Positions 1 to 23,618 of a stretch of 64,000 bases of DNA are shown here, piece by piece. Below the pieces are notes generated by a model. That model had not been told where the DNA came from and did not search any database. It saw only the letters and a list, made by a program, of their open reading frames with translations. Origin of the DNA: Mytilus edulis (taxonomy: Eukaryota); contig NC_092356.1 of assembly GCF_963676685.1 (NCBI RefSeq), positions 50,282,001-50,346,000 of the forward strand, in the 5' to 3' direction. Position numbers and translations under genes: made by a program. The stretch's first letter is position 1. Each line of letters starts with the position of its first letter.

Positions 1-1271
1 GAGGACATAGCTCCTTTACCAGGAATACCTTGGGGTTCACGAATATTACGAGAATGTCCTTCCTCACTACCGCTGATTACTCCTCTTTGATGATCAAGGG
101 AGCGTCGTATTCTACTCTCCCTTGCAAGTTTATTCATAATTTCACGAGGGGAAGGTTCAGAAAAGTCCTCCCCTACAAAAAGACTGGAAGATTTATTGTA
201 AGAATCCCTACGAGAATCATCCTGACGATTGACTTCTGTAGCACTATTTACCGACTCCGTACCAGAATCAGTATGAACATTGTCTGAATCAGGTTCATCA
301 ATCCTTAATACTTCTACATTGTTTTTAATGTCTTCAGAGTCACACTCTGATGTTTGTTCACTAGAAGTGTCTAAAATTTTAGGTCTATATTCATCTTCTG
401 GTAGTTTTACTTTCAGATCATATTCTTGAGGAATTTCTGGCGGTGGTTTTTGTGGACGAGGCACAGGTTCTACTCTCTGTATGATTTCTGGTCTAGGTTT
501 TGGAGCAGGTATTGGTATATCAGATCGTTTGCTGTCAGGCCGTGGTTTTGGAACTGGTTTCTGATGATAACTCATCTCTGTAAATTGATTAAAATTCATT
601 TCAGGTGGTTCTAAGTCAAAGTCATCTATCATTGCAAGAGGCACCCCATATGTACTATCTTGATGTACAGGAGTAACCTCCCTTCTTTCTGGTGTAACCT
701 CTCTTTTCATTGGAGTTATTTCCCTTTTTGCAGGAGTAATTTCTCTTTTTGCAGGAGTTATATCTCTCTTTGCAGGAATTATTTCTCTTTTCGCAGGAGT
801 AATTTCTCTTCTAACTGGAGTTAACTCCCTTTTGACAGGAGTTACCTCTCTTTTAGGTGGAGTAACTTCCCTTTCTTCAGAGGAGTATGAAGTACCAGAT
901 TTTTCCTTCACAGAACCTCTCATAACTAACTGGTTATAAGCCTCCATTGCTCCAGGAGGAACACTTTCTACTTGATCTGCTTTATTTTTGATCTCCTCGG
1001 AGAAAGTACGTTGACGATCAAGTTTCGGACTACGTTTAAATGAGAATTTGAATCTTGATCCATTCTGTGGTGACCCTGAATCACTTTCTGAATCTGACTG
1101 ATATTTATCAGGTGACGAAGGTTCTTGTGATGATGACATATGAGAACGAGAACTTAATTCATTTGCCATGGCGATAGCATCATCTATCATTTTTTCATCA
1201 GATGCTGACATTGGTTTGACTTTGGCTTGTTTTCGTGGTTCTGGTTTCGGAGGCTCCCTGTTTCGAGGTTC
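1..1271 (-). CDS. Ack-like: Ack-like large C-terminal exon (partial, runs off the window): Pro/Ser-rich disordered tail
   Basis: ccttgcag acceptor; reading frame stays open for >420 codons to position 1 (EPRNREPPKPEPRKQAKVKPMSASDEKMIDDAIAMANEL...KPVPKPRP...). Confidence 0.92.
663..872 (-). repeat. Coding 21-bp tandem repeat x10, encoding R-E-(V/I/L)-T-P-x-(K/R) heptads
   Basis: REVTPPK REVTPVK RELTPVR REITPAK REIIPAK RDITPAK REITPAK REITPMK REVTPER REVTPVH. Confidence 0.95.
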
Positions 1272-1806
1272 CTGCAAGGCAAAAATTGAACATGCATAGT
1301 GATTACATAAATAGATACATGCTGTCTATAATAAAGATATTTTCATATACTCCAGACTTGATTATACTGAAGAAAAGCTGAAGATAATTTCTATAAGAAG
1401 AATATAATAATTACCCTATATCCCTTTTCTCCTAATGAGAATATACAATATTTATATGTGAATGTATATGTAAAAAAAAAAAGGATATTTAATTCAGATT
1501 TATGATTTTTTCAATCTGTCCATTCATCAATTGCTTGTATAGATTGATTGTTCCTTGTACGTCAGAGATTGTAAATTGAGCAACAGCAACATGCAATGCC
1601 ATGCACATAATGATCACAGTTGAATTTTTTTGTGTTTGTTTTTTTAAAGTTTTTTTTTCTTTCTATTTTATATCATAATACACTTTTTTAAAGCAAATTA
1701 AAGAGAAATATATGTTTCATTCCATATAATTTAACAAAATTTTGCAGAGAAGAAAGATTGAACAGCTATAGCTGTTAAGAGGAAGTAGAATTAGAGGCAG
1801 ACATAC

Positions 1807-2007
1807 TAGTCTAGGTGGTTGAACAGGAAGTGGTGGTGGTGGTGACTTTGATCCTCTCCCATTGGTCATCAGTTTAGGAGGCGATTCATGTTGAGGTGTT
1901 GTAGTTGCTGATGAATCATTTGAAGATGAGTTTGCCAACTTTGCCTCTTTGTCGTTTATTGCTTTCAATACTTCATCCATAAATGAAGGTCCGAAATCAA
2001 AAGAACT
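1807..2007 (-). CDS. Ack-like: Ack-like exon: SSFDFGPSFMDEVLKAI...SPPPPLPVQPPRL
   Basis: ttttacag / gtatgt, 201 nt, phase 0-0; DFGPSFMDEV resembles the DLGPSxxDEV segment found downstream of CRIB in CDC42EP/PR2-type proteins; proline-rich. Confidence 0.88.
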
Positions 2008-2705
2008 CTGTAAAATGTCAAGTTTTATAATTAAATATCAATAAAAAAAAAGATATGGTAAATATACAGAAATGACATGTCAGACGGCAATCTTACAACA
2101 ACAAAAAAACAACAAACAAAAACATGTAGAGATCAGTGAAAGTTATTTAATAATAGACTATGCTTGCTATGATATGGACAAATTATGAATAAATGTCAAT
2201 ACATTTAATGATTTGCATTTTTTTTTTAAATCAAAATCGCAATATTTTTCTCAAGAACAAAAATTTAATTGTGTTTTATTTTATAACTAATGGTCTTGAA
2301 TCAGGGAAGACTTGTGCCCACGTAAAACTGATTTTAACAGTTAAACACCCATCATACGTTTTACCTGTCCCTAGTCAGGTTATCTGTTTTAAGTTGTAGT
2401 CTTTGTATTTAACTTTTTGGAGGAATCTGTATTGTCGGTTTATGTGATTTTTTATTTCATTATCTAATATTTTTGGTAATGTCTATTATAGTTTTTTTTG
2501 ACATTATCTAATTTATCTTTTATTAATTACAGTGTATTCTGTTTATCCATCACACAAGAGGACCAGAAAAAAAGTTGGATTAAGCAGGGTATTGGAATAC
2601 TCAGGTTTTTTTCTGCAACAATAGGCATATTTTGGGATAGCCCTAAGATGTTATGAATCATAGACTGTTAGTACAAACGTTTATATATGATTTATTTTTT
2701 CATAC

Positions 2706-2929
2706 CGACATGTCAGGCATTTTGAAGTCAGCAAATATAGAATCATCATCTATATCTTGATACTGGAAATCTCCACTATCAACCTCGTCTGTCCTTGTTA
2801 CATATTGACTGTCTATAGATTCCTGACTTATCCAGGAGTGACCATTAGTACCCAGAGATCCATTCATATTATGTCCATTTTCATCTCTATTAAGACTCAC
2901 AGTTGATATCCGACTTTCACCTTCTTTCC
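2706..2929 (-). CDS. Ack-like: Ack-like exon: post-CRIB linker (GKEGESRISTVS...DDDSIFADFKMPDMS)
   Basis: tcttccag / gtatga, 224 nt, phase 1-0, open frame. Confidence 0.85.
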
Positions 2930-3442
2930 CTGGAAGATAGATCATAATCATCATTACTTACTATAATTGTAATTACTTCTTTCCTTTCAATAATCTATCC
3001 AGGTTGTATTTTCTATTTTTGAACATCCATAAACTATATGGCCCTGTATTAACATGATTTTTTCATAGCATTTTCAAATTAACATATTTTAAGATGGATG
3101 TCTTTTTATCCTAAGCATGGAATTAGATCACCATTAATTTCTTTCCATAAATTAAATACAAAAATTTAAAAGTAAATGTTTCTGTTTTAGGGTCTTGATG
3201 CTATGCAGATATATTTACAACAAAGGCTTATTTTCATTGTTGAAAGCTATACTGTGACCTATATTTGTTGACTTTAATGTCAATTTGGTCTCTGATGGAG
3301 AGTGGTCTCATTGGCAATAATAGCTCATCTTCTTATTTTTACATTATAATATTGTAGTTTTTTCTGCATATTACAAAATGTATAATAAAATATATCATAA
3401 TGAAATATCTTTTATATGATTTTGCAAAATCTAAATACCAAC

Positions 3443-3607
3443 CTGTACTAGCAACTTTGACTGGCAGTTTGTCGTAATTATCACCAATGAAACCAACATC
3501 ACCGAAAATAGCACCATCGTAACCAATATGCCCTGTGTGACGAAGGTCATTCTGTGGACCACTGATCATCTCAGCATTGAACCGCCTTAATGACTTCCTG
3601 TTTGATT
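3443..3607 (-). CDS. Ack-like: Ack-like exon: CRIB (Cdc42/Rac-binding) motif (ESNRKSLRRFNAEMISGPQNDLRHTGHIGYDG...)
   Basis: ttattgcag / CAG|gttggt, 165 nt, phase 1-1; ISxP...xHxxHxG CRIB consensus. Confidence 0.93.
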
Positions 3608-5047
3608 CTGCAATAAATAAATAATAATTTTAATATATTATGGAGATTTTTTTATTTAATGTTTGAAGTCAAGTTCCTGAAAAGTAAAATGTAAACAGAA
3701 ACAGAAATTGCTAAAAATGGAAAATAAAATTTTATATCAAGATTATCCAATGACATTTTTCAACAGAAATTGACGAAACTGATTAATAAAATTATGTTTC
3801 GAAATATTTCCTTTTACATATATAGAGAATAAAAAATAATTCTTATATTAGTTTTAAAACTGATTAAATCATGTGTAAGCGTTGACTGTGTCATTGCATA
3901 TTTCTGTGTATTATTTAAGCATGTGGCCATTCCCATACAATGGAAGCAATATCTGTGGTACAATATATACCTTTAAACCTGTGTCATTTAACTATACTTG
4001 TGTTTCATATTTATGTAAATATCAAATAAAATATATGAGCTTTGACAATCTATAACATATGACAATTTCCTTTGAAAAAAATTTGACTTGGTATGAAAGC
4101 CCTCTGGTCAAAATTTATAAGAACAGAATTTACAATGATACAGGAGTATCTTTTATGATGAACAGTAATATCTGTCTAAATTAACTGTATCCCTCAGGAC
4201 TGTGTTTGGCATAGACACTAGTGTCCACAGTTTACTGGTTTAATTACTACAGAATGTTCTTATTACAAGAGATCAGATGGTTTTAATCAGTTAGTTTTCA
4301 CTGTTAAAATATTTCTCTAAAATAAATTCTTAATAATTGACATCTTTTATAAAACCCTGAACCTGGAAGGAACCTGTTAGTTTGGAAAAGGTCAAGGATC
4401 AGATATAGGGTTCACTCCATTCTAATGTAATTAGTAGAACAGCATGAAGCTTATTTTAGCTCACTTGAATTAATTATAATCAGTTGCAGTTAGCATAAAG
4501 CTTTTTCCTTATTTATTTTTAAGGTTTCAAATTTCACATTTGGATATGATTCCACTGCTTTGTTGTTTAAAATCGCGAAATTTTACACCCTAAAAAATAA
4601 CTCGCTATACGGTATAAATTTAGTGAATGTGACATCCATTTTTTAATAAACTCAAGACAGAACAAATTTTGTTTTAGGGGCCAGTTGAAGCCAGCCTGTG
4701 GCTGTGGGATTTTCTTGCTATATTGAATACCAATTGGTGGCCCTTGGTTGTTTTCTGCCCTTTGGTCAGGTTATTTCATGTGACTTAATTTCTATCTAAA
4801 AAAGCCCATGCCCCACAGACAGATGATCTATTTTGGAGCTGAGACCCAGTTGTCAAAATTATGGTCCATTCTATCTAAGTATCTAATTAAGAGATCATGC
4901 TGCTCCAACTTGTTGAGGATCTGATTAATGACCTTATTTTAAGTGATATTCTAATTTTTTGGCATTATGTGATAAGTCATAAGCTGTTGTCAATATTTTG
5001 TTATAGAAGCCACACTACACATCTATTTGTCCCTTCTCCAATCTTAC

Positions 5048-5092
5048 CTTTCTTACCACCCTTTTTGGGGGATTTTTCTTTCTTGTCTGATT
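5048..5092 (-). CDS. Ack-like: Ack-like microexon F (ESDKKEKSPKKGGKK)
   Basis: atttatag / AAG|gtaaga, 45 nt, phase 1-1; a second in-frame gtaaga donor lies 9 nt inside. Confidence 0.7.
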
Positions 5093-6219
5093 CTATAAAT
5101 AGCATAACCAATCAAATTGTAAAAATAAAGATTTAGGCATAATTGGGGTCTATTGTAGCAAATAGGAGTTAAATCAAAATAAGATTATTCACTACTAAGC
5201 ATCTAGCAAACATTTTTTTTTTAAAATACAATAAAAAGTAAAATCTTTTATCTTTTATTCAAGAATTAATTGTAATTGTAATATTCATTCCACATTTTTG
5301 CATGTCTAACATTTTTTTATCATTAAAAATTTGCAATTCTTTAAAATGATTGTTTTCTTGTTTGCATTTTGGAAACTTGTAGTAAATGTCTGTAGAATTT
5401 AACTCCTCTATTTAAAATATATTCAATGTCTAAGTATGTAGAATACTAAACTACCTATAATACTGTATTTATAAAAATGTAAAATTTAGGACTCGGCATG
5501 CTGGCATAGTTTCATTATATGACTGACAGTGGCTCTCTGCCAGCATGCAAAATGTGCTCTTGTGCTGAAATAAATGCTATTATGAAATGCATATACATCA
5601 AGCAATGATATGATTCTATTCTACAGTATAAATTGTAAGACCCTAAATTCCCAGCTTATAAAAAGAAGAGAAGAAAACTTCTAAATACAGTATAAGAAAA
5701 TCAGAATAAAATGAAGCATATCTAGATAGTAGTATTCCTTTAATCTAACTACCTAACCTAAATGTTTAAAAAATTTGGCTTGCAAAAAAAACAAAAAAAA
5801 CAAATTGGTAATAAATGCAAGAAATAATAAAATCCAATATTAGTGTTATAAAAGAAACAATTGAATGTAAAAGAGTAAAAAAATATTAATGTAAATAAAG
5901 ATGATAGGCAAAAATGTTCATAAAAATTACCCAAAATTTTTATTATAAATCTCTTAAAAAAATTCCACAGCATGAAAGCAAAATTGAGTAAAATCAAAGG
6001 ACAGGTACACTGATGATTTTGATGATTTTATTGAGTGATCTATGTCATCGTCTAAGTGATAGTAAGTCCTTGACTAATATTTTAGACTCATGTCTGGGTT
6101 CAACTTGAGGAAGTTCCAATTTGTTATCAGTATTTTTTGAAGATACTCATAGCAGTTTGTGGATAAAAGCATGATTATGATGTGCAACATTTTCTAGCAT
6201 TTTTGTTCTTTTTTCTTAC

Positions 6220-6276
6220 CTTTCCTTACAAGTTTGACCATAGGTTGGTCTGAGTCAGCTTTTTCTTTTTTAGAGT
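6220..6276 (-). CDS. Ack-like: Ack-like microexon E (DSKKEKADSDQPMVKLVRK)
   Basis: tttcatgtag / AAG|gtaaga, 57 nt, phase 1-1. Confidence 0.82.
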
Positions 6277-6682
6277 CTACATGAAAAATTTACTATTTAT
6301 TTGGGGTTTCCAAATGGAAATTAAACCAATTTTGTTAATAGATAATGATAAGAAATCAAATATACTTGTTCACAAATATTTAAGTGTAAAATTTCATTAA
6401 TCTGTAAGACATTTAAAAAAATTATTATAACAATTTAGACAAAATTTTCTAGTAAAAGAAAGATAACTCTATTATGAAAAGGGTTATAAAAAACAGGTGC
6501 ATTGTATTTTTGGAAGTTTTTAATGTGTATCTTAATCCTCTCTTAAATGGAGCTCTTCCCCTAAAACCATAATTATCATTTAAAAAAAATTTCCATTTTC
6601 ATTTGAATTGTGTTTTAAGTATGGCAAGCCGGGATAAAAGCAAGATAATGATTTGCAACATTTCCGAGCGGCTTTTTCTTAC

Positions 6683-6736
6683 CTTTTCTTGAAAGTTTGA
6701 CTTTAGGTGTGTCCAATTCTTTTTCCTTTTTAGAGT
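6683..6736 (-). CDS. Ack-like: Ack-like microexon D (DSKKEKELDTPKVKLSRK)
   Basis: tttcatatag / AAG|gtaaga, 54 nt, phase 1-1. Confidence 0.82.
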
Positions 6737-7007
6737 CTATATGAAATAAGGATATTTTGTTCTTCACTTTTGGACTGATATTTTTAATAACCATTCACAC
6801 AAAAAACCATGAATTTACCAAATTTTAATCATTGAAAAATAAGTTAATTTCTATATTCTTTCTTTGTTATATTCAATACAAAAAACTATAGTTTTTGATT
6901 TTTGTTGATTTAAAGTTCACTTCAAAAATGTTAAACATTGAAAAACGTGAAATCAAAGTTAAGGCTAATATATATTACTTTGTGAAAAGTTGTGTGTGAG
7001 AGCTTAC

Positions 7008-7064
7008 CTTTTCGACTGAGTTTAATTTTGGGTGTGTTTGATTCCTGGTTTTCTCTTTTAGAGT
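7008..7064 (-). CDS. Ack-like: Ack-like microexon C (DSKRENQESNTPKIKLSRK)
   Basis: gttttcatag / AAG|gtaagc, 57 nt, phase 1-1. Confidence 0.82.
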
Positions 7065-7776
7065 CTATGAAAACAAAGGAGTGCAAATTCACACAAAAGA
7101 AACAATACTTTACAAACTAATATTTAATCTTGCTAATAAAAGCTCCAACACTCTTGATTTTGATATTAAGTTCTCTTCTGATAATACATTAGAAAAAGCA
7201 ATATATAATATGGAATCCAATCCATAATTTTAGGGTAATCCTCAAATATAGAAAAGTCTGTTTCACTGATTATCTTTATTGTTAGCAATATTTTATTAAA
7301 AAGGCATAGAAAATGTTGGATTATCTCTTAAAAACTCCAATTACAATGACCATAAAAGTGGTCATGTTCCCAGCCAATGATCAAAATCGGGTCAGATTAT
7401 TTCATGAGCCAAAAAATATCCAAAACTAATGAATTCAAATTTTTACAGATCCAATGACTTTACTCTATAGAAAATTTATAAATTTTCCTTTTACAATTTT
7501 GATTACAAGCAATGTTTTTTTAATAGCTTCAATAACTATCTGAGCTCCAATAACTGTCTGACCAGATTTTATCACTGGCATGTGAATATTCTGTTATTTA
7601 CGAATCTTTCTTATACATTATCTCTGGCATCCAGTCTAATACTTTCCCGTAGGATTTTAAAAACAAGCAAATTAACAAGCAGGAATTAAATTAAAAACAG
7701 ACGACAGAGGATATAATTAATGCTGAGACCTTTTCTACCCGTTAGCTTGTTAGGAGAGAAAGAGTGTCGATCTTAC

Positions 7777-7833
7777 CTTTACGACTTAGTCGTATATTAG
7801 AGAAGAATGAACTTCCACTCTCTCTTTTAGATT
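7777..7833 (-). CDS. Ack-like: Ack-like microexon B (ESKRESGSSFFSNIRLSRK)
   Basis: tttctaatag / AAG|gtaaga, 57 nt, phase 1-1. Confidence 0.8.
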
Positions 7834-8411
7834 CTATTAGAAATAACGGGAAATAAAATATTTTTATTCATCTGATTTCAAAATTGTAATGAAAAGTTAC
7901 TGAACCCATAAAAATGAAATTTTCTAAAATTCTTGTACATTAATTTTGATTAATTACTTGCATATTCTTATTCAAAACAAATAACAATATTTGAAATAGT
8001 TAAAAAATATTTTACATTAATTCTGAAAATCATCTACTTTTATATACTGATTCAAATCAAATAATAAAATTTGAATTAAACTGTACAATGTGTTACATGA
8101 AACTAAAAAGACCTTTGCTGCATTTAGCATTACATTGGTTTATTTATCACAATATTTGAGATATATTTTAGATTCCATATTACAAAAAAATGTTTAAACA
8201 ACTAAAATCATCACTATGTATACATCTATATAAAAGAAAGAACAGAATTTAAGCAAGAAAAGACCACCCAACTATTTTTGACAATATTTTCCGAAGTGAT
8301 TTTGAATTGCATTTAGTAGTTACATAAAAAGCTGACAAGGTCGATGACAAGGTCAATGACAAGGTCGTAGACAAGCGAGAAAGTAAAGATTTGTTAGACA
8401 TAGAGGCTTAC

Positions 8412-8459
8412 CTTTACGTGATAGTTTTATTTTTGCATCACCATTTTCCCGTTTTGATT
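8412..8459 (-). CDS. Ack-like: Ack-like microexon A (ESKRENGDAKIKLSRK)
   Basis: ctttttgttag / AAG|gtaagc, 48 nt, phase 1-1, open frame, paralogous to neighbouring microexons. Confidence 0.8.
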
Positions 8460-9231
8460 CTAACAAAAAGTTTATACATGTCAATTATACTAACTACCCA
8501 CACATAATAATTAATGGTTTAATTTACAACATATAAGAATAATCTCGGCGAAAACTCTGTATTATTATACAACATAATTCTATTAAACTCTGTAAACTAC
8601 ATGCTGTAGTTCTATGACCAAGACGAAAATTTATAGTCCAACTGGGGCATATGAAGTATCCAGATGTTTATATAAGTAAAAGTTATAGCTGAATCACCTA
8701 TTTCTAGTGAAGTTTTATCCCTACTTTTTTCATAATTCTGACTTATATCTTGGTCAGTTCTAAAATTTGTTTCTTCTTGTTCGAGTCCAGTCTATAAGTA
8801 AAAGTCCTGGTTCATACCTAGTTGATCTAATCCATTAAACTAATACACATAACAATATCTCTAGTTCAAAATTATAAATCAATGAAAATACATTTCCAAA
8901 CACACATGCAAAAATGTCTATTTCTGGGTTATGATGGAACCATGTAATTTAAAAAATACTTTTATCAATTGATATAAAATATTTTAAAGGCAAAAAATGA
9001 ATATCTTTTTCACTTGTTTTTTTACTTCATATTGAAAATTTGTAGAACCAGCTGTAATTTTAAATTCCAATGTAACCAAATTCATAAATTCATAAAAAAA
9101 AACCAACATTCCTTGTATCAATGACTACTGTAAACATTGAAAATCAAAGGTCAAATGTTACCCCCTGATGACAACATCAATGCCATGTTACTATAGTAAT
9201 GCAGTAACCTCCTGACCCCTGTACAACTCAC

Positions 9232-9371
9232 CTTTTCTACTGATACTTTTAGACACACTAGGACTATTCTTGTGTTCAATTATTGGCATAACATTAGCTG
9301 GATCAAAATATCCACATTTACCATTCCCAAGAACACCCTTCCAGAATCCTGACTTCGGACAATCTTCAGGG
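9232..9371 (-). CDS. Ack-like: Ack-like exon: SH3 C-terminal half (PEDCPKSGFWKGVLGNGKCGYFDPANV...SKSISRK)
   Basis: ttttcag / gtgag, 140 nt, phase 2-1; WKG and G.F...V SH3 motifs. Confidence 0.92.
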
Positions 9372-10021
9372 CTGAAAACATATATCTTCAAGTAATTAAA
9401 TGTTATTCCCTAAAACCCCTCCACAAAACTGTCTATGGAAAATATTCTATACTGTGACAGGTAACATATCACCATCAATTTCTCCATTTAAATTTGAGTG
9501 CCTGCAAGCATGTTTAACTCCACCACATTATGTATGTGTTTGTCCCTAGTTAGGGGGCTTGTCATTATCTTATGTTGCTGTGTAACATATTTGTACTTTT
9601 TTTTATTACAAAATGTTTCTGTACCATTTGTATAAACAAGCTTCTAAATTCATTTTTCTTGAATGAACTGTCCCAGTTAACAAGGGTCATTCAGGGGAAA
9701 ACATGTTTACATAAGACATTGTCTCTTGAAGATATTCATTTTTTTTGTAACTACATCCATTTTTTCTCTGTTAAAAAGTACTAAACTGGATGATTGTGTA
9801 TGCACTCCCCTCAGCCTACATGCAAACTTTGTCACATGAATGAAATGGCAAATGGGTCTGTAATTCATTATTTTAAACTTGTAAACAAAATAAGCTTCAA
9901 ATTTTAACCTGAACAGAACATATTCTAATAAACCAAAAATCAGATTCATATCTGTAAGAATAACATACTTTTTATAATCTATGCATGTGAAATTTCTAAA
10001 ATTCTTTATACTCCAACTTAC

Positions 10022-10128
10022 TTTTTATCTAATACATATATGACATCATATGATTTATAATACAGGAAGTCTTTAGGTACAACCACTTCTGGGAAATCTT
10101 TCATAGCTTTAACTTGGGTAGGTCTCAT
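10022..10128 (-). CDS. Ack-like: Ack-like exon: SH3 N-terminal half (MRPTQVKAMKDFPE...FLYYKSYDVIYVLDK)
   Basis: ttacag / gtaag, 107 nt, phase 0-2; VKAxxDF and L.Y...DVI.VL SH3 strands. Confidence 0.9.
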
Positions 10129-10423
10129 CTGTAATATAATCCAGAACTCATAAAATTTTCAATGCTGTGGATTCATTATTATTTTTTGGATACCAATTTT
10201 TTCGTGGATTTCATGGGTACAGGGGGACCATGAATTTAAATGTTCAACAAAATACAAATTGTCTTCAGAACAGTATGCAGACTTTGTCAAAACCACGAAA
10301 TCAAATATCCATGAATATGCAAGTTTCCATCAATCCACAAAAAATTGGTACCCACAAATATAATAAAGTAATCTCAACAATTTTTCCCTGGACATATCTG
10401 GAAGATCTGTACTTTGTGTCTTT

Positions 10424-10681
10424 TACAGCTAATTTCCTTATGCATGTAGAATAAGACTTTGGTAAGCTTGCTTGCTTGCTTTGTTTGTATATTGTACAAT
10501 TGTAATTGGGATAACGTTCTATCAAATTTAAATATAATACATGTATATACAGGTTTAACTATGCCTATTTATATTGCTTGCAGATTTCAATCTTAATTAC
10601 AATGCTTCATCTAAAGTTTATAAAAACAAAGCAAGTAAGCCAACAAAGTCTTACTCTACAACCATTAGGAAATTAGCTCTA
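10424..10681. mobile_element. MITE-like element with ~50-bp imperfect TIRs; second copy at ~46300-46523
   Basis: tacagctaatttccttatgcatgtag... / ...ctacaaccattaggaaattagctcta; homologous copy inside the CACTA element. Confidence 0.65.
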
Positions 10682-11369
10682 ATAGTGTTGTTGTGCTTTA
10701 TATTCAGCTGATAAGTTAAATCCTTTTTCACAGATTTTTATAGTCTTTATGTTGTGCAGTTACACTACCGTCAAAATCTGGGGGAGGGTTGAGCACCTGC
10801 AAACATGTTTAACCCCACCACATTATGTATGTGCCTGTCCCAGGTTGGGAGCCTGTCAAGCAGTGTTTGTCATTTGTTGCTGTGTGTATCATTTGTTTTT
10901 CGTTTATTGTTTTGTACATAAATCAGTAAGTTGGCCATTAGCTTACTCGTTTGAGTTTTACATTAGCCATTTCAAGGCCTTTATAGCTTGCTATGCTGTA
11001 TGTGTTTTATTTTTATTTGTTAAAATCCGTCCAATGGCCTATAGTTGCTAACTTCTACATCAATTGTTCTCTTGAGAAGAGTTGTCTTATTGGCCAACAT
11101 ACTACATCTTATTTCTATCCTTGCAATATGGTATGAAATATTTAATAGGAAACAAAGGATTGAGGAACATAAATTAGTATATAGTGGAATAACAGGAGCC
11201 AACATTAGGCCAAACAAAAAAGTAATTGTGTTTACTGTTACATGCAGAAAAAAATAGGGTAGGCAGGTAGGTAGGGAATTTTTTGAATTTTTAATAATTT
11301 TTAATAATTTTTTTAAGTCTATTGGAGCAACATTGTGACTTCAACAATTGTTAATCAAAAAAGGTAAAT

Positions 11370-11657
11370 ACAAGAATGTGTCCCCAGTACAAGGATGCCT
11401 CAATCGTGCTATCATTTTCTATGTTCAGTGGACTGTGAAATTGAGGTAAAAACTCTAATTTGGCATTAAAATTAGAAAGATCATATCATAGGGAACATGT
11501 GTACTGAGTGTTAAGTTGATCGGACTTCAACTTCATAAAAAACTACATTGACCAAAAAACTTTAACCTGAAGCGGGACAGACAGATGGAACAAACGAACG
11601 GACATACAGACCAGAAATCATAATGCCCCTATACTATCGTAGGTGGGGCATAAAAAA
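11370..11657 (-). mobile_element. Non-autonomous Helentron/DINE-like (HINE) element, nested in a small TIR element (~11208-11722)
   Basis: Subterminal hairpin gcccc..tac tatc gta..ggggc next to an A/T run, plus an internal gaca/gaac microsatellite; outer ends ggccaaacaaaaaagta / tactttttttgtttggtt. Confidence 0.6.
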
Positions 11658-11737
11658 CTTTAGGGTAGTTAATACAAATAAGAGTAGGTAGGGGTATAGT
11701 AAACATACTTTTTTTGTTTGGTTCTAGCTCTACCTAC

Positions 11738-11887
11738 CTGAGGTAACATTACAAATAATTCACTGAACAATGGACGTCTTTCTGGATCATGTTCCCAACA
11801 TTTGGTCATTATCTGGTAGTATTCTTTAGGACATAAATCTGGTCGCTCTAGTCTTTGGCAGTTTGGTGCATCTATTGATTCTAATAT
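11738..11887 (-). CDS. Ack-like: Ack-like exon: kinase C-lobe end (ILESIDAPNCQRLERPDLCP...KCWEHDPERRPLFSEL)
   Basis: tag acceptor, CAG|gtaggt donor, 150 nt, CW..DP..RP.F motif. Confidence 0.95.
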
Positions 11888-12211
11888 CTATCATAGAAAC
11901 AAGAAAATAAATAAACTACATAGAAATGTGTAAATTTTATCATTTTTGTTGAGGTGTAATAGTAACATGTAATACAACACATAACCCAAATAATTCAGTC
12001 CCACTCTGTCTCTCTCATTTCCTAGGGCCAACTTTCTTCATATAGTAAAAATGGGCCATGAATACTAGATTTTGATTGGTGCTTTCTGTGAGAAAGCAAA
12101 TCAGCTGCCAGCATAGTTTTATTCAGTATTCTAGGGTATTTTAGCCACCATAGAGCAACAGTATGAAATGTATTCATCAAGTACAGTTGAAAATTGTTTA
12201 CTTTGGTTCTA

Positions 12212-12409
<198 letters not shown>

Positions 12410-13205
12410 TTATGTTGAAATATTTCTTTGAACATCTTAACTAAACAACTATCAAAACTCAATTTCTGTTTGGTAATATATTGTAAACAAACAAAATTTT
12501 TCATGACTTTGGCAAAAAGAAAAAACACAAATATAAATGGTTAGTTTAAAGTAGTCAACAGTCATCAAAATTTGTTCATACATTATGTTGGTATTGTAAG
12601 ATATATTTATTGGGGTATTTTAAGGAAATCTGGTACACATTGATATAACATATAAAATGGTTTTTTTTCAAGGATTTTGTAAATATTACCATTATGACAA
12701 TTTTATATTCGAAGTTAGAAAGAAATTAACTGACTAAAGAATGGTAGATGTAATCACAGATTCCATTTTATTGTATTCTATTTTTACATGCCTCAACAAA
12801 ATCTAAAAACATGATGACACCAAAGAATTTCAATTTACCCTTTGTGATATGTCTATTGTAATCTTTGGCTTTAAAGTTTGTTGCTGTATCTCTCATTTTC
12901 TTAATTGTTTTTTGTATTGCTCATAAATGAAGCCATTTAGTTTTCTCATTTGATTTGCTTTACATTTGGCATTTCGAAGCACTTATAGCTTTATACTATG
13001 CTGTAAGGTTTTTGCTCATTGTTGAAAGCTTTAATGATCTATAAGCCTTCTACAGCATTTTTCTCTTATATATCTCCTTATTTTTATATTGACCATCATA
13101 TTACATTTCTTAATGTTGTGAGATATTTATTCTATGCTTATAAAACAAAAGAAAATTAAGATTATCTCCCTTATACCAATGACTATAAATATATATGTAA
13201 CTTAC

Positions 13206-13303
13206 CAAGCTATAGGCAATTTTAGGTTTAGACTAAAATTACTCTGATAGTAATCTTTACCGATACCTAAGGCTCGAGATAATCCAAAGTCACTTATTTT
13301 TAC
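13206..13303 (-). CDS. Ack-like: Ack-like exon: activation loop (VKISDFGLSRALGIGKDYYQSNFSLNLKLPIAW)
   Basis: ctttcag / gtaag, 98 nt, phase 0-2; DFGLSRALG..KDYY..NF..NLKLPIAW matches the PR2/Ack-like subfamily as I recall it, rather than ACK1. Confidence 0.96.
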
Positions 13304-13392
13304 CTGAAAGAAATAGAAATATAAATGTCATAAAGTACATTGATGACAAGTTCATCTGATTGAATAATTCTGCATATGAATTTAACAACATT

Positions 13393-13525
13393 TAAGGAAT
13401 GACTGTAATATTTTTTCTGTCTATGAAGAAATAACATTAAAAATGTGGTGCACACTGAATAACGTGTGCACCACATTTTTTATGTTATTTCAAATAGACA
13501 GAAAAAATATTACAGTCATTTCTTA
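13393..13525. repeat. Long near-perfect palindrome (~62-bp arms, 8-nt loop), probably part of an unclassified element extending to ~13673
   Basis: ...aaaatgtggtgcacac tgaataac gtgtgcaccacatttt... Confidence 0.85.
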
Positions 13526-14482
13526 TAATTTAATTCTAAATTCCATTTTAAACCGTAGAAACCCATGAAAAAACGTTGATGATGTCACGGTCACATGACT
13601 AAATTATGTCTATGGGCTCATAACAAAATAACGTCAGCCAATCAGAAGACGCGTTACATCCAAAATTAAATTATTGTCTTAGATTATGTATCTTTTTTCT
13701 CCGATCTAAATTGATGAGGATTGCAAGTTTTCCTGCAGAAAAATTGGTGGTTCTCTCATGATACTCTAGTTTTTTCAATTATTTAAAACTTGCCGTCATG
13801 AAAGAGCAAAAAGTGCTAAAAGGGGCATAAATAATACAGGGTTTGAAATTAGCAGGAGCCCACTCACCAATGGCCCCTAAAATTTGGTGTGGGCTCCTAA
13901 AGTTTCTGCTTTTCTTTAGAATTATTATATATATTATTGGCTACAAAATTGAATCTGTGGGCTACCACTGCCAAAACCTGAGTGGTTACCAACAATCTTT
14001 ACTTTTAAGTATTACATGTTTTGTAAAATAGCGTCTTTTATAATTTGTTGTATGATTTCTGCGTTTAAAAATGATACCGGTGAGTTGAAAGGTGTGTTTG
14101 TAGAAATACCAAAATGAACTGCTTTTATATATCAGATATGTTAGTAAATTAATGTATAACTGTGTTGAACTGTACAAGGGTTTCATAATCCTTCCTGTTA
14201 AACGGTACTTTTTGCATTTATATCATTGTATATAAGAGTACTTTTCAATATATTCCATGAATACCAAAATATCAATTTTCCAAAATTCAGGCAGTACTTA
14301 TTAGAAGTATAGAATTCTAATAAATGGATTGTATTGACATTCTTGATGATGCAAACCTGATGTTTAATATAAACATGTCAAAATAACCTCATCACATTTC
14401 TCTTCCTAGTGGCAATAAGTAAATAAATTTTTGAATATAAAATCAAGAACTTAATCTTGGAAAATTAAGAGAGTTATCTTAC

Positions 14483-14674
14483 CTTAGATTTACTAAACAC
14501 CAATATATTTCTTGCAGCTAAATCCCTATGAATTAAACGTTTACTTTCTAAATAACTCATTCCATCACAAATTTCTTGAGCAAAATCACAAAGTCTTGGT
14601 AAAGGAAAGTCAGTTCGTAATGATTGTTCTTTTAGGCACTCTAATAATGATCGCATTGGAGCTAGTTCTGTGAC
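14483..14674 (-). CDS. Ack-like: Ack-like exon: hinge and catalytic loop ([15 protein letters not shown]...[16 protein letters not shown])
   Basis: cctacag / gtaag, 192 nt, HRDLAARN tyrosine-kinase signature. Confidence 0.97.
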
Positions 14675-15415
14675 CTGTAGGATATTAAATATAAAACTTA
14701 AATTTCTAGTCATTTGAAGATTTCATTCTTGTTCATGATGTGCTTAAGTTCTATGTTTATTTTAATTTATAGAAATCATTACTAGCCAACACTTTACTGG
14801 AACGTGATTATTGTTTCTTCCTACTATTTAAGATACTTTCATACAATATCAAAGTAACATTATTATCTGCAAAAGATGGTGGTATATGTTTTTCAGCAAT
14901 ACTTTAACAGTTTGTGGCTCAAGTGCATTGTTACTGATTTCTATTGCTGTGGGCAACAAATAGAAATATCTAGCTTAAAACATTTGAATAAAAGGTACTA
15001 TCTTATATAATTTGGTCTCTGGTGAAGAGTTGTCTCATTGGCAATCATACCACATCTTCAATTTTTTATTTTGTGTGTATTTTTTTTCTTCTTAAATTTT
15101 GGTATGTATGTTTATCTTATGTATTTCTGTCATAATTCATCATTCTCAGAGAGAATAGTAATCTCCTGACATATTACATGGATCCAATACTCCTAAACAA
15201 ACTGATTATGACTGCAACATTAACATTCTGCACAACACCATAGGTTTAACAAGTGGTCAGAAGCCAAGGTGGACAAAATTATTCTATACCAATGCTATAA
15301 TGGTAAACTTTCCAACCTTGGTTTAATCATAAGATGGAAGTCAGGGTAGATCCATTCAATACTTAAGCTATCCTCAAGCTTTAAACTGGGTATAAGCACA
15401 TATCTTTGTACCTAC

Positions 15416-15568
15416 CAACATTAAGGAATCGTCTTTATCTAACACAACACCATACATTCTAACAATATTTTCATGGTCAACATTCTGCATAATATTAGCC
15501 TCCTTTAAAAATTCTGTCGTTCCTGTGTGCATCTTTTCTTTTGTAAGGCATTTTATTGCAACTTGGAC
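15416..15568 (-). CDS. Ack-like: Ack-like exon: kinase subdomains II-IV (VQVAIKCL...EFLKEANIMQNVDHENIVRMYGVVLDKDDSLML)
   Basis: tttcag / gtaggt boundaries, 153 nt, VAIK lysine and helix-C Glu. Confidence 0.95.
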
Positions 15569-16714
15569 CTGAAATATATAAAAGTTTTAATAAAAGGACT
15601 GCATTTTAAAAGTTCTCCTCGTGTACATTTTTCATTTTTTCTTCAAAAGCTACAGAGGCTTTTAATTGTAAGTTTCTTTTCTTTTTTTATTGTACTGATG
15701 TCATCAACTCGTATTCTAGTGTGTTTTTATTTCGTTGCTTTAATTGTGTTATCACATCATAGTGTAATGTTTGTAAATGTTGCTAGTTCATCCGGTAACA
15801 GTACCCAAAAAGTCCCTTTATTCTACCTGGACCAATATTATTATTCAGAGTTATTAGTCTTTGCTCTAATGCCACTCCCTTCACAAAGAAGCAGCCAGTG
15901 GCAATTCCAGAACTTTTCATAAGGGGGCCCTGACTGACCTAAAAGGGGGGGGGGGGGGGTGCTACAGTCATGCTTCCTATGACAGCAAATACAAATTCTT
16001 ATCTTTCAAGTTCAAAACAACTATTGAATCACTGAAGGTGAGCATATGAGACCACATTGAGGTTGGACACGATTGAGACAGGGGCAGTGTCCATCACTAC
16101 ACAGCTTTTCATTCATTTTAAAGCATTTTAAATCAATAAACAATAAATATGATATGCATAGCCTTATATAAAATAATTAAATGATCAGGTGACATTTACA
16201 GTTGAGATGAGGAAACATGAGATAACATATTGAATCATTCATTATTCTCTGATGGTAGATGTGTGGTCCCAGCACCAATGGCATTAAATATTTACTCATT
16301 CCACACAAATCCATACACTTCATCTATATTTTCTAATACAAACTTGTTACAGTTCTTTTTCAAGTAGGAAATAACTATTTCATGTCTACTATTCATCTGT
16401 AAAATGAGTTTTTATCTACCATTGAGAATTTAGCATCATCATTATACAAAGGGTGTCTTTGTTAGTAAGTTTATATACCTTATCACATATAACATGCGAT
16501 CATGATGATTCAATGGTAGTTCATACATTCATGTATTTTAAATAGAAAGACTGATCTTTTATAGAATATTTGGTAGAATGTTCTTAGTACCTAAAGTTTT
16601 TATGTGTAATTTTTGTGAATGTTTTTAATGTTTTGATTTATTTTCTACATAACTCTTCTCCGTTCATCATGTATTCTTTTTAATAATATCTCCCCAGTTG
16701 CCAATGCTTCTTAC

Positions 16715-16921
16715 TTTTTCTCCTGTCTCTGTAGTCCATAACCCTTGCTGTACAATACCAAACTCCCCTTCTCCAAGAGTTTTATTGATCTGGATTGAAT
16801 TGGCGGGTATGATTTGTTTACAAGGAGGTCTGATGTAGGATGATGGTCGTGGAGATCTTTGTTCTGGAGGTGAAGGACTCAGTGATCGTCCAATGTCTCC
16901 ACCTGATCGAGTTAAAATTGC
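16715..16921 (-). CDS. Ack-like: Ack-like exon: linker and kinase subdomain I (AILTRSGG...LGEGEFGIVQQGLWTTETGEK)
   Basis: tttttcag acceptor, gtaag donor, 207 nt, phase 0-0, GxGxFG loop. Confidence 0.95.
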
Positions 16922-19900: not shown

Positions 19901-20103
19901 ACAGGTCCCAGGGTATTATTTTTTAATGCCATTTTGATATTATCAAGACCAAGGGATACAGCTTTGTACAAGGTAACAGGTTCGAAATATAATTTATAGA
20001 CTTTCATCAAAAAGATTTTTGAAGATACTAAGGGGGTATAGATGTGTAAAAAGATTACAGAATCTTTTCAAGAGTCATCCTGTCTGTGATGCATGCATCT
20101 ACT

Positions 20104-20186
20104 AAAATGGTGGTGGAAAGAAGATTTGCTACCAAAATTATGGTGGAAAGAAGATTTGCTTCCAAAATGGTGGTGGAATAAAGATT
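20104..20186. repeat. 30-bp tandem repeat, ~2.8 copies
   Basis: aaaatggtggtggaaagaagatttgctacc units. Confidence 0.85.
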
Positions 20187-23100: not shown

Positions 23101-23618
23101 AAGTGTCAGTCTCACATCAGGAACATAACAACTGCTGGTCTTTATGTTAAATTCATTTTCAAGACTTTTAGGCGATTAAGTGCTTGACCCCTACATGTTT
23201 GATTTTTTAAACAGCTGGGTTGCTGTCATACCATGCATCTTCTTATATTCATATAGCAACATTCATCATCATCATCCATAAATATGATAATGTTTCAAGA
23301 TGTTAAAAACACAAAATATGTAATTATAAAATAAAAAAGAGGACACCTGGCCAATTTATTGTTTATGTAGTGTGATAATAGTTAAACATTTGGTAAAACT
23401 TGAGGTTAGGTGTAATTTGATTTGAAATCCATGTGCAGTACTTGAAAACTTAATCTACAAATACACCAATATAGAATGACCTCACAAATTATCAGGCTAT
23501 AAGGGACGGGCTATAAAGAGTAAAATGTTGAGGTCATTGGACAAGTAATTCTATTTCACTATTTTTTTTTGTTTTCATATATATATATAAGACATCCCTT
23601 TCTCACAAAGAAACCAGC

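What the first reader, a model, noticed from the sequence alone, without database searches (positions are those of the whole stretch)
5048..8459. Cassette of six paralogous, frame-preserving microexons between SH3 and CRIB: a candidate splicing-tuned linker for a Cdc42 effector kinase
Seen: six exons of 48, 57, 57, 54, 57 and 45 nt, all multiples of 3 and phase 1-1, with AAG|GTAAG donors and tag acceptors. None appears in the ORF track. They encode related Lys/Arg-rich peptides: ESKRENGDAKIKLSRK, ESKRESGSSFFSNIRLSRK, DSKRENQESNTPKIKLSRK, DSKKEKELDTPKVKLSRK, DSKKEKADSDQPMVKLVRK, ESDKKEKSPKKGGKK. Any subset can be skipped without frameshift (2^6 = 64 combinations, 0-106 aa). Established: basic stretches just N-terminal to CRIB motifs (WASP, PAK1) affect Cdc42/Rac association and phosphoinositide binding. 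Inference: alternative splicing of this array could tune SH3-CRIB spacing, charge and GTPase or membrane engagement. I know of no such array in Drosophila PR2 or vertebrate ACK1, but I have not searched.
Basis: partly seen in the sequence, partly recalled or inferred. Interest (0 to 1): 0.88.

Follow-up and report, generated by a model that had tools for sequence, protein, structure and literature searches.

The report
Spliced basic-linker exon array in mussel ACK
In mussels, the gene for the Cdc42-binding tyrosine kinase ACK carries six small duplicated exons that RNA data show are spliced in or out in many combinations, which puts zero to six copies of a positively charged, floppy peptide module just in front of the Cdc42-binding motif; what this does is untested.

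Summary
Six short exons (48, 57, 57, 54, 57 and 45 nt; minus strand; all phase 1-1; TAG acceptors, AAG|GTAAG donors) lie between the last SH3 exon (ends 9232) and the CRIB exon (starts 3607) of an ACK/TNK2-like kinase gene.

RNA-derived reads and contigs from four runs give 12 GT..AG junctions exactly at the predicted borders. Seven are neighbour-to-neighbour joins. Five are skipping joins: E1-E3, E4-E6, E1-E6, E5-CRIB and SH3-CRIB.

Public gene models of Mytilus species, including this genome, already hold 13 different exon combinations, from none to all six.

The array occurs only in Mytilus and in one unnamed protein cluster, 83% identical overall, which has five modules. About 45 other ACK-like proteins (molluscs, annelids, nemerteans, a brachiopod, a bryozoan) have a short linker with the single junction ..SRK|ESKR...

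Each module is basic (net +2 to +4) and predicted disordered, and each join recreates an RK[DE]S motif.

Vertebrate ACK is described in the literature as lacking the basic region that WASP and PAK have next to their CRIB motif. The tunable Cdc42/membrane-engagement idea is therefore reasonable, but it remains inference.

I found no paper describing the array. I class it as a new member of a known kind: a combinatorial array of cassette exons.

The parts
9232..9371 (-). Last SH3-domain exon of the ACK-like gene. It ends ..SKSISRK and its donor is AAAAG|GTGAGT (phase 1).
   Evidence: Sequence. The own-genome protein P0204, residues 115-446, aligns in one stretch to the solved ACK1 kinase-SH3 chain 4hzs_A (E 1.3e-81). 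Joints run from 9232 to 8459 and to 3607.
8412..8459 (-). Cassette exon E1, 48 nt, ESKRENGDAKIKLSRK, net charge +3.
   Evidence: joints SH3-E1 in X1, X2 and X9, plus E1-E2, E1-E3 and E1-E6. Present in proteins. 15/16 residues identical in the second cluster (P0226).
7777..7833 (-). Cassette exon E2, 57 nt, ESKRESGSSFFSNIRLSRK, net charge +3. It is the only module with aromatic residues (SFFS).
   Evidence: joints E1-E2 and E2-E3, the latter also in one raw RNA read of X24. It is skipped in the E1-E3 joint (X1, X2, X9).
7008..7064 (-). Cassette exon E3, 57 nt, DSKRENQESNTPKIKLSRK, net charge +3.
   Evidence: joints E1-E3, E2-E3 and E3-E4. Protein models.
6683..6736 (-). Cassette exon E4, 54 nt, DSKKEKELDTPKVKLSRK, net charge +3.
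   Evidence: joints E3-E4, E4-E5 and E4-E6. Its downstream intron flank is homologous to that of E5 (local alignment z = 12).
6220..6276 (-). Cassette exon E5, 57 nt, DSKKEKADSDQPMVKLVRK, net charge +2. It is the youngest duplicate, paired with E4.
   Evidence: joints E4-E5, E5-E6 and E5-CRIB. It is skipped in the E4-E6 joint. Flank homology to E4.
5048..5092 (-). Cassette exon E6, 45 nt, ESDKKEKSPKKGGKK, net charge +4. It is the Lys-richest module and, when included, lies directly in front of the CRIB exon.
   Evidence: joints E6-CRIB (X1, X2 and one raw read of X24), E5-E6, E4-E6 and E1-E6. It is skipped in the E5-CRIB joint.
3443..3607 (-). CRIB / GTPase-binding exon, 165 nt, also phase 1-1. 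It starts ESNRKSLRRFNAEMISGPQNDLRHTGHIGYDG.
   Evidence: Pfam PBD 22.2 bits (cut-off 21.3) and the ACK-type GTPase_binding family at E 0.0058 (17 bits, below its 23-bit cut-off). Joints from 3607 to E6, to E5 and to the SH3 exon.
3..24287 (-). The host gene as far as the window holds it: SAM_TNK exon (24287-24066), tyrosine-kinase exons (16.9-11.7 kb), SH3 exons, the array, the CRIB exon, and a long disordered C-terminal exon (1271-3) that runs off the window.
   Evidence: Pfam hits and a tblastn map of the own-genome protein P0209 on the window.

Best explanation
This is a mussel-lineage (Mytilidae) tandem array of six paralogous, frame-preserving cassette exons in the ACK/TNK2-like (activated Cdc42 kinase) gene. 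It sits in what is, in all other surveyed animals, a single phase-1 intron between the SH3 exon and the CRIB exon. SHOWN: the exons are transcribed, and they are joined in genomic order in many combinations. The result is 0 to 6 copies of a 15-19-residue module ([DE]SK[RK]E...K[IV]KLSRK) between the SH3 domain and the Cdc42-binding region. Each module adds +2 to +4 net charge (+18 for all six). Every exon-exon join recreates the same ..SRK|[DE]SK.. junction, with an RK[DE]S motif, which other lophotrochozoans carry once. The region is predicted to be disordered. INFERRED, origin: the founder exon arose from the SH3/CRIB exon boundary region and was then multiplied by unit duplication, with E4/E5 the latest. 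The 5' end of the modules resembles the CRIB exon start. Their 3' end resembles the SH3 exon end and, in part, the CRIB exon end. INFERRED, function: the array works as a splicing-set, graded polybasic spacer in front of the GTPase-binding region. Vertebrate ACK lacks the basic region that gives WASP, and probably PAK, electrostatic steering towards Cdc42 and phosphoinositide binding. Inclusion of modules, above all the Lys-rich E6 and the basic-aromatic E2, would raise the association rate with Cdc42 and/or affinity for acidic membranes. It would also lengthen the SH3-CRIB tether. I rate the structural part at about 0.95 and the functional part at about 0.35.
For: Exon anatomy. Twelve spliced joints at the exact borders, five of them skipping joints, come from four runs in four studies and two species labels, one of them raw reads on record as RNA. 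The host gene is ACK-like: SAM_TNK, PK_Tyr and PBD hits and alignment to the ACK1 kinase-SH3 structure 4hzs. Thirteen exon combinations occur in database proteins of this genome, M. californianus, M. trossulus and M. coruscus. A five-module version is present in a second cluster with 83% overall identity, where E1 is 15/16 and E6 13/15 identical. The array is absent from all other ACK-like proteins found. Intron-flank homology survives only between E4 and E5, while all the exons stay alignable. All length differences between paralogues, and the E6 indel between species, are multiples of 3. Charge and motif counts. pLDDT is about 30 with no secondary structure across the array and CRIB. The literature states that ACK has no basic region and that adding a positive motif N-terminal of its GBD could raise the on-rate to WASP levels (PMC5500802; PMC6166713).
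Against: No binding, lipid or localisation data exist for any isoform. Mollusc ACK-like proteins already have a basic start to the CRIB exon (ESSRKSGRK..), so extra modules may be redundant. The modules also contain 2-4 acidic residues each, so they are not a clean polylysine patch; only E6 comes close. Conservation is concentrated at the exon ends, which are purine-rich, and may reflect splicing enhancers rather than protein function. The middle of the modules and E2 evolve fast (E2 is 8/19 identical between the two clusters). Contig depths cannot give inclusion levels, and no tissue information was available, so regulated rather than noisy splicing is not shown. Some annotated combinations may have been assembled by the annotation pipeline from separate junctions rather than seen in single molecules.
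Confidence: 0.6

Rival explanations
1. The exons are real but the variation is neutral. A recently expanded, disordered, low-complexity spacer has weak TAG acceptors that make the spliceosome skip exons stochastically. Under this reading, isoform diversity has no length- or charge-specific function.
For: All six cassette exons use TAG acceptors with poor pyrimidine tracts, whereas 7 of 8 checked constitutive exons of the gene use CAG. The region is predicted disordered. The array is lineage-restricted and other animals do without it. The module interiors and E2 diverge fast.
Against: The frame is preserved through every duplication and indel. E1 and E6 are 94% and 87% identical between two clusters that are 83% identical overall, while intron flanks have lost all similarity except between E4 and E5. 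The junction sets differ between runs: the direct SH3-CRIB join and no E2 joints in X9, against E2-containing and E1-E6 forms in X1 and X2. That difference hints at regulation.
Confidence: 0.25
2. The array is functional, but through multi-site phosphorylation or localisation rather than direct Cdc42 or lipid engagement. Each join recreates an RK[DE]S (AGC-kinase-type) site and S-x-[KR] (PKC-type) sites, giving 1 to 7 copies. KR...K.K..RK spacing also resembles bipartite nuclear-localisation signals. Under this reading, splicing sets the number of switchable sites or the nucleo-cytoplasmic distribution.
For: There are seven [RK]K[DE]S and fourteen S-x-[KR] matches in the full linker. The single RK[ED]S at the SH3/CRIB exon junction is conserved in most surveyed lophotrochozoan orthologues. 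E2 combines basic residues, Phe and Ser, in the manner of a MARCKS-type effector domain (my own knowledge).
Against: These are motif matches only; short basic Ser motifs are common in disordered regions. No phospho-proteomic or localisation data are available. This reading is not exclusive of the best explanation, since phosphorylation could switch the charge off.
Confidence: 0.1
3. The effect is through geometry and autoinhibition. Lengthening the tether between the SH3 domain (which packs on the kinase C-lobe in ACK1) and the CRIB and downstream regulatory regions changes intramolecular inhibition or dimerisation, independent of charge.
For: The array lies exactly at the end of the region that aligns to the ACK1 kinase-SH3 crystal chain. 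The linker length varies from 0 to 106 residues. ACK regulation by intramolecular contacts involving the SH3 domain and the Mig6-homology region is discussed in PMC10047419.
Against: According to PMC6166713, ACK is not thought to be autoinhibited through its CRIB region. More than 600 disordered residues already separate the CRIB from the Mig6-homology region, so 106 more should matter little for that contact.
Confidence: 0.05

Closest known systems
Combinatorial cassette-exon arrays at a single site (CD44 variable exons v1-v10; NCAM muscle-specific-domain mini-exons; titin PEVK exons). Comparison from my own knowledge.
   Same: A run of short, phase-symmetric exons in one intron position. They are included in genomic order in many combinations and encode a flexible or disordered insert whose length and composition are set by splicing. 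The PEVK exons likewise arose by tandem duplication.
   Different: The host is a cytoplasmic signalling kinase. The modules are paralogous basic peptides placed next to a GTPase-binding motif, and every join recreates the same junction motif. The array is restricted to one bivalve family and has not been described in a paper I could find.
Tandem duplicated, mutually exclusive exons (Dscam1-type; human events reviewed in PMC9741552)
   Same: Origin by tandem exon duplication, paralogous exons, preserved frame.
   Different: These exons are not mutually exclusive. The E1-E2, E2-E3, E3-E4, E4-E5 and E5-E6 joints and the all-six proteins show additive inclusion. The exons add to one another rather than substitute.
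Basic region N-terminal to the CRIB motif of WASP/N-WASP and PAK1 (PMC5500802, PMC6166713, PMC2150699)
   Same: A cluster of Lys/Arg in a disordered segment immediately upstream of a CRIB motif. In WASP this drives electrostatic steering to Cdc42 and contributes to PIP2 responsiveness.
   Different: Here the basic segment is modular, optional, up to 106 residues long, and interspersed with acidic residues and Ser. Its effect on Cdc42 or lipid binding is untested. It sits in ACK, which in vertebrates has no basic region.
Vertebrate ACK1/TNK2 and Drosophila PR2/Ack-like
   Same: Same domain order (SAM, Tyr kinase, SH3, CRIB, long disordered tail with a Mig6-homology stretch) and the same exon boundary position between SH3 and CRIB as in other lophotrochozoans.
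   Different: Their SH3-CRIB linker is short and fixed. No surveyed orthologue outside the two mussel clusters has inserted modules.
Neural microexons (3-27 nt, Srrm4/eMIC-dependent). Comparison from my own knowledge.
   Same: Short, frame-preserving, alternatively spliced exons that modulate interaction surfaces of signalling proteins.
   Different: These exons are 45-57 nt. No consistent UGC motif lies upstream of the acceptors. Tissue specificity is unknown. They form a paralogous array rather than single conserved exons.

Membership tests
ACK/TNK2-family non-receptor tyrosine kinase (host gene) | N-terminal SAM_TNK domain | tested here: met
   PF22931 at 87.5 bits (cut-off 25) on window:24021-24290:-.
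ACK/TNK2-family non-receptor tyrosine kinase (host gene) | Tyrosine kinase domain followed, not preceded, by an SH3 domain | tested here: met
   PK_Tyr_Ser-Thr hits on two exons. P0204 residues 115-446 align in a single stretch to the ACK1 kinase-SH3 chain 4hzs_A residues 12-330, E 1.3e-81.
ACK/TNK2-family non-receptor tyrosine kinase (host gene) | CRIB / Cdc42-binding region directly after the SH3 domain | tested here: met
   PF00786 PBD at 22.2 bits, against a cut-off of 21.3. PF09027 (ACK GTPase_binding) reaches E 0.0058, below its cut-off. Sequence: ISGPQNDLRHTGHIGYDG. Binding to Cdc42 itself was not tested.
ACK/TNK2-family non-receptor tyrosine kinase (host gene) | Mig6-homology region and C-terminal UBA | tested here: inconclusive
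   The block ..SEPSPREIMNKLARESRIRRSLDHQRG.. is conserved across the orthologue alignment, but no Pfam hit was obtained on window:3-1325:-. The UBA lies outside the window; long database isoforms end in a UBA-like tail.
Combinatorial cassette-exon array (CD44 v-exon, NCAM MSD, titin PEVK kind) | Several adjacent exons, each phase-symmetric so that any subset keeps the frame | tested here: met
   All six exons are multiples of 3 and phase 1-1. All 13 observed combinations are in frame.
Combinatorial cassette-exon array (CD44 v-exon, NCAM MSD, titin PEVK kind) | Independent inclusion or skipping seen in RNA | tested here: met
   Five skipping joints and seven neighbour joints. Whole-molecule combinations are known only from annotated models, not from long reads.
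Combinatorial cassette-exon array (CD44 v-exon, NCAM MSD, titin PEVK kind) | Tissue- or state-regulated inclusion | not testable with these tools
   Only one read-laying run was allowed, sample descriptions are coded, and contig depth is no measure of inclusion.
Mutually exclusive tandem exons | Only one exon of the cluster appears in any transcript | tested here: not met
   Joints between neighbouring array exons, and proteins that hold all six.
Microexons in the strict sense | Length 27 nt or less (or 51 nt or less in the loosest usage) | tested here: not met
   Lengths are 45, 48, 54, 57, 57 and 57 nt. Only two are 51 nt or less.
CRIB-adjacent basic region (WASP/PAK type) | Cluster of Lys/Arg in the disordered segment just N-terminal of the CRIB motif | tested here: met
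   E6 has 7 Lys in 15 residues and ends 14 residues before ISGP. Each module is net +2 to +4, and the region has low pLDDT.
CRIB-adjacent basic region (WASP/PAK type) | Raises the association rate with Cdc42 and/or binds phosphoinositides | not testable with these tools
   This needs kinetics and liposome assays. Only the literature analogy is available (PMC5500802, PMC6166713).

The most novel reading that the evidence does not exclude
Mussels have evolved, by exon duplication, a splicing-encoded rheostat on a Cdc42 effector. The number of basic modules (0-6) placed in front of the ACK GTPase-binding region would set, in graded steps, the on-rate for Cdc42 and the affinity for acidic membranes. 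Phosphorylation of the RK[DE]S sites recreated at each join would reverse the effect. Inclusion would be tissue- or state-regulated. This would be a natural version of the experiment proposed in PMC5500802, which suggested giving ACK an electrostatic steering region. It would also be a rare case where copy number of a linear motif is set post-transcriptionally.
Probability: 0.25. Interest if true: 0.7.

Novelty: new member of a known kind. Interest (0 to 1): 0.5.

Why it matters
The array is a clean, RNA-supported example of how tandem duplication at an exon boundary can build a modular, combinatorial linker in a signalling kinase within one animal family.

Vertebrate ACK is the CRIB effector noted for lacking a basic region. 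The mussel isoforms therefore offer ready-made natural constructs (0, 1, ... 6 modules) for testing how polybasic segments next to a CRIB motif affect Cdc42 recognition and membrane engagement.

There is also a practical point for annotation. These exons are invisible to ORF-based reading. They multiply isoform counts (19 or more RefSeq isoforms in M. californianus), and about half of the possible array junctions were recovered from just four runs.

If the splicing turns out to be neutral noise, the locus is still a useful dated series for studying the birth of cassette exons.

Tried and rejected
- The repeat finder on the minus strand returned an error. I replaced it with my own pairwise alignments.
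The genomic exon structure and the organism of the second (P0178/P0226) cluster could therefore not be examined.
- The one metagenome scan, with P0224 as query, returned four loci. None covers the linker. L004 holds a CRIB exon of an unrelated invertebrate with only 739 bp upstream and no module.
- The search of earlier findings by place found nothing near the window.
- Paper searches for mussel ACK isoforms, microexons and tandem exon duplication found no description of this array.
- I looked by eye for a shared UGC (Srrm4-type) motif upstream of the acceptors. It is present only before E3 and E6, so I rejected it as a common feature.
- I tried to decide the founder exon's origin from exon-end identities. 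The 5' ends are closest to the CRIB exon start. The 3' ends resemble the SH3 exon end (E2, E3: 11-12 of 18), but those of E4 and E5 also match the CRIB exon end (13 of 18). A-rich composition inflates all the scores, so the two scenarios are not resolved. The scenarios are a chimeric exon from a duplication spanning the intron, and a duplicated CRIB exon with an internal deletion.
- I considered and rejected an assembly or haplotype artefact, because several species and RNA junctions agree. I also rejected chance ORFs, because the exons are spliced and conserved.
- I built and searched no joined spliced model of my own. Searches used single exons by reference or proteins returned by the databases.
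- Complex prediction was not used, because no by-reference Cdc42 of this animal was available without joining exons.
Full report
**What is in the sequence**

The stretch 3400-9500 was read on the minus strand. A mechanical scan looked for AG|exon|GT[AG]AG units that are open in phase 1-1.

| Exon | Window coordinates | Length (nt) |
|---|---|---|
| E1 | 8459-8412 | 48 |
| E2 | 7833-7777 | 57 |
| E3 | 7064-7008 | 57 |
| E4 | 6736-6683 | 54 |
| E5 | 6276-6220 | 57 |
| E6 | 5092-5048 | 45 |

- All six have TAG acceptors and AAG|GTAAG donors.
- They encode the quoted peptides, which total 318 nt or 106 aa.
- The window holds no N.

**The host gene**

The surrounding gene runs on the minus strand from about 24.3 kb to beyond position 1.

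- Pfam finds SAM_TNK (87.5 bits), two tyrosine-kinase exon pieces, and the P21-Rho-binding (CRIB) domain on the exon 3607-3443. The CRIB hit scores 22.2 bits against a cut-off of 21.3. The ACK-type GTPase_binding family gives a weaker hit.
- An own-genome database protein, P0204, aligns over residues 115-446 in a single stretch to the solved ACK1 kinase-SH3 chain 4hzs_A (E 1.3e-81).
- The exon ending at 9232 is therefore the end of the SH3 domain, and the gene is an ACK/TNK2-like (activated Cdc42 kinase) gene.
- The CRIB exon is itself 165 nt and phase 1-1.

**RNA evidence**

The look-up of sequencing runs listed 24 runs. I laid four of them, from four studies, on window:3420-9400:
- X24: raw reads on record as RNA-Seq, species label B, the same label as the best DNA holder of the window.
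- X9: Logan contigs, label B.
- X1 and X2: Logan contigs, label A, evidently a very close relative.

Twelve joints were reported. All are CT..AC on the + strand, which is GT..AG on the gene strand, and all lie exactly at the predicted exon borders.

| Joint | Type | Seen in |
|---|---|---|
| SH3-E1 | neighbour | X1, X2, X9 |
| E1-E2 | neighbour | X1, X2 |
| E2-E3 | neighbour | X1, X2, one X24 read |
| E3-E4 | neighbour | X1, X2, X9 |
| E4-E5 | neighbour | X1, X9 |
| E5-E6 | neighbour | X9 |
| E6-CRIB | neighbour | X1, X2, one X24 read |
| E1-E3 | skips E2 | X1, X2, X9 |
| E4-E6 | skips E5 | X2 |
| E1-E6 | skips E2-E5 | X1, X2 |
| E5-CRIB | skips E6 | X2 |
| SH3-CRIB | skips all six | X9 |

- The paralogous exons share no 31-mers, so de Bruijn chimeras cannot explain these joints.
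- The contig runs are only guessed to be RNA. Precise GT..AG intron removal in twelve alternative forms is itself the signature of spliced RNA.
- Depth over the exons is 25-250, against 0-20 over the introns.
- Contig depths are means over whole contigs and give no inclusion levels. Sample descriptions are coded, so tissue regulation could not be assessed.
- The junction sets do differ between runs. X9 has the direct SH3-CRIB join and no E2 joints. X1 and X2 have E2-containing and E1-E6 forms.

**Relatives**

I searched exon by exon, by reference.

- The C-terminal exon (window:3-1325:-) against 1.84 billion representatives gave full-length ACK-like proteins.
- With the oyster protein P0001, region 385-530, the search for homologous proteins returned 56 named or unnamed orthologues.
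- Extracting the SH3-to-CRIB segment gave a short linker in every surveyed orthologue outside the two mussel clusters: oysters, Pinctada, scallop, Mya, Mactra, Dreissena, Sinanodonta, Solemya, gastropods, a chiton, cephalopods, annelids, nemerteans, a brachiopod and a bryozoan.
  - In most it measures 65-77 residues from the W.G motif to HTGHIG, reaching 86-97 in the bryozoan and one unnamed protein.
  - Most have a single ..[ST][IL]SRK|[ED]S[KSG]R.. junction.
- Mytilus proteins differ.
  - RefSeq isoforms of M. californianus (X11, X12, X16-X19) and M. trossulus (X18, X19), the M. coruscus TNK2 entry, and the models of the window's own genome carry different subsets of the six modules.
  - Among about 25 proteins I counted 13 combinations, always in genomic order: none; 1; 6; 1-2; 1-6; 1-2-6; 1-3-4; 1-3-6; 1-2-3-4; 1-3-4-6; 1-2-3-4-5; 1-3-4-5-6; and all six.
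- A search with the full linker itself (P0209, residues 455-585) found only the Mytilus clusters and one further unnamed cluster, P0178/P0226.
  - That cluster is 83% identical overall to the Mytilus protein.
  - It has five modules: E1 15/16 identical, an E2-like module 8/19, two E3-like modules, and E6 13/15. One transcript-derived member skips the E2-like module.
I take it to be another mytilid on sequence identity alone.
I did not verify that beyond the 100% linker identity with M. trossulus models.

**Evolutionary anatomy**

- The exons are 60-80% identical pairwise.
- Intron-flank homology survives only downstream of E4 and E5 (local alignment z = 12; all other pairs z < 3). E4/E5 is therefore the latest duplication. 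The older duplicates have kept their exon sequence while their introns decayed.
- Length differences between paralogues (45, 48, 54, 57 nt) and the E6 indel between species (KKGGKK versus KKGKK) are all multiples of 3.
- The module starts ([DE]SK[RK]E) resemble the start of the CRIB exon. That exon starts ESKR/DSKR in other bivalves and ESNRK in Mytilus.
- The module ends (K[IV]KLSRK) resemble the end of the SH3 exon (..SISRK here; TLSRK, SLVRK and QLTRK elsewhere).
- Ungapped DNA comparison supports the first resemblance. For the 3' end it is ambiguous, because E4 and E5 also match the CRIB exon's own 3' end in 13 of 18 positions.
- Two scenarios remain open:
  - A tandem duplication with breakpoints in both flanking exons, which automatically creates a chimeric internal exon.
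  - Duplication of the symmetric CRIB exon followed by loss of its middle.
- Either way, the consequence is that every join, whatever the subset, recreates the ancestral ..SRK|[DE]SK.. junction.

**Properties of the insert**

- Each module has 5-7 Lys/Arg and 2-4 Asp/Glu, for a net charge of +2 to +4. That gives +18 for the full array.
- The full linker has seven [RK]K[DE]S and fourteen S-x-[KR] matches.
- E6 is the most Lys-rich module (7 Lys in 15 residues) and sits 14 residues before the ISGP of the CRIB motif.
- E2 is the only module with aromatic residues (SFFS, kept in both clusters).
- An AlphaFold2 model was built for the all-six M. californianus isoform with a 28-sequence alignment. 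It is confident for the kinase and the SH3 domain. Residues 391-640, which span the array, the CRIB and beyond, have pLDDT about 30 and no secondary structure. That is consistent with intrinsic disorder.
- Splice signals fit regulated cassettes. All six exons have TAG acceptors with weak pyrimidine tracts, against CAG in 7 of 8 checked constitutive exons, combined with consensus donors. Because the six are paralogues, this is descriptive and not six independent observations.

**How it most likely works**

- Shown: splicing places 0-6 basic, disordered modules between the SH3 domain and the GTPase-binding region.
- From established knowledge:
  - In WASP the basic region N-terminal to the CRIB drives electrostatic steering to Cdc42. 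Removing it halves kon.
  - Human ACK has the lower on-rate and 'lacks the electrostatic steering mechanism'.
  - The authors proposed that adding a positive motif to the N terminus of the ACK GBD could raise its on-rate (PMC5500802).
  - ACK 'does not possess a BR' (PMC6166713).
  - N-WASP responds jointly to Cdc42 and PI(4,5)P2 (PMC2150699, listed).
- Inference: module inclusion gives mussel ACK a graded polybasic segment that raises Cdc42 association and/or acidic-membrane affinity and lengthens the tether. Phosphorylation of the repeated Ser sites could reverse the charge.
- Rivals, each with its own test given in the structured fields:
  - Neutral splicing noise in a young disordered spacer.
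  - A phospho-site or localisation rheostat.
  - A pure tether-length effect on autoinhibition.

**Comparison with the known, and novelty**

- As a kind, this is a combinatorial array of symmetric cassette exons, like the CD44 variable exons, the NCAM MSD mini-exons and the titin PEVK exons (my own knowledge).
- It is not a mutually exclusive cluster; this was tested and not met.
- It is not a strict microexon set; the sizes are 45-57 nt.
[quoted passage not shown] No other surveyed orthologue has the array, and no paper found describes it. The isoforms are, however, already present in automated RefSeq annotation.
- I therefore file it as a new member of a known kind, of moderate interest. It is a confirmed, tidy, lineage-specific system with a directly testable but unproven functional hypothesis.

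- There was one reads call only.
- The metagenome scan gave nothing usable.
- I made and searched no joined spliced model of my own.

Noticed in passing
window 57008-59783 and 42883-43263: A 45-bp satellite with 61.6 copies (93% matches), and a second block of 8.5 copies of the same unit 14 kb away. On the minus strand it reads as a long open frame of a 15-residue repeat. That is almost certainly a non-coding artefact of the period being a multiple of 3.
   Followed up: no
window 699-874 (inside the C-terminal coding exon 1271-3, minus strand): A 21-bp (7-residue) tandem repeat gives about 10 copies of KRE[IV]TP[AV]. This is a run of Thr-Pro motifs in the disordered tail of the kinase.
   Followed up: no
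database proteins of this gene (P0168, P0202, P0213 versus P0204, P0209 and others): The isoforms fall into two C-terminal classes. One is about 1077-1172 aa and ends ..GQGRRTARK. The other is about 1441-1555 aa and ends in a UBA-like tail..SSPEIIDV. This is a second, independent alternative-splicing choice downstream of the window.
   Followed up: partly
P0199 versus P0200 (Watersipora subatra ACK-like isoforms X6 and X3): This bryozoan also has two isoforms that differ by an 11-residue, unrelated insert inside the same SH3-CRIB linker. The site may be a recurrent target of alternative splicing.
   Followed up: no
window 5048-5060: E6 contains an internal in-frame GTAAG donor, 9 nt upstream of the used one (GGGTG|GTAAGAAAG|GTAAGA). 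It would give a 36-nt version of the exon. No read or contig used it.
   Followed up: partly
window 8331-8368 (intron just downstream of the E1 donor): Three direct copies of GACCTTGTCA lie about 45-80 nt after the E1 donor. This could be a splicing-regulator binding cluster or could be chance.
   Followed up: no
G000:C13:13605219-13613480: There is a second SAM_TNK-encoding gene (another Ack-family paralogue) on the same chromosome-scale contig, 36.7 Mb away. Whether it has a CRIB motif or any array was not examined.
   Followed up: no
PDB 9p9u_A: The best PDB sequence hit of the full-length protein is a 678-residue chain titled 'Epidermal growth factor receptor' that matches in two stretches. 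The second stretch may correspond to the Mig6-homology region. This was not examined.
   Followed up: no
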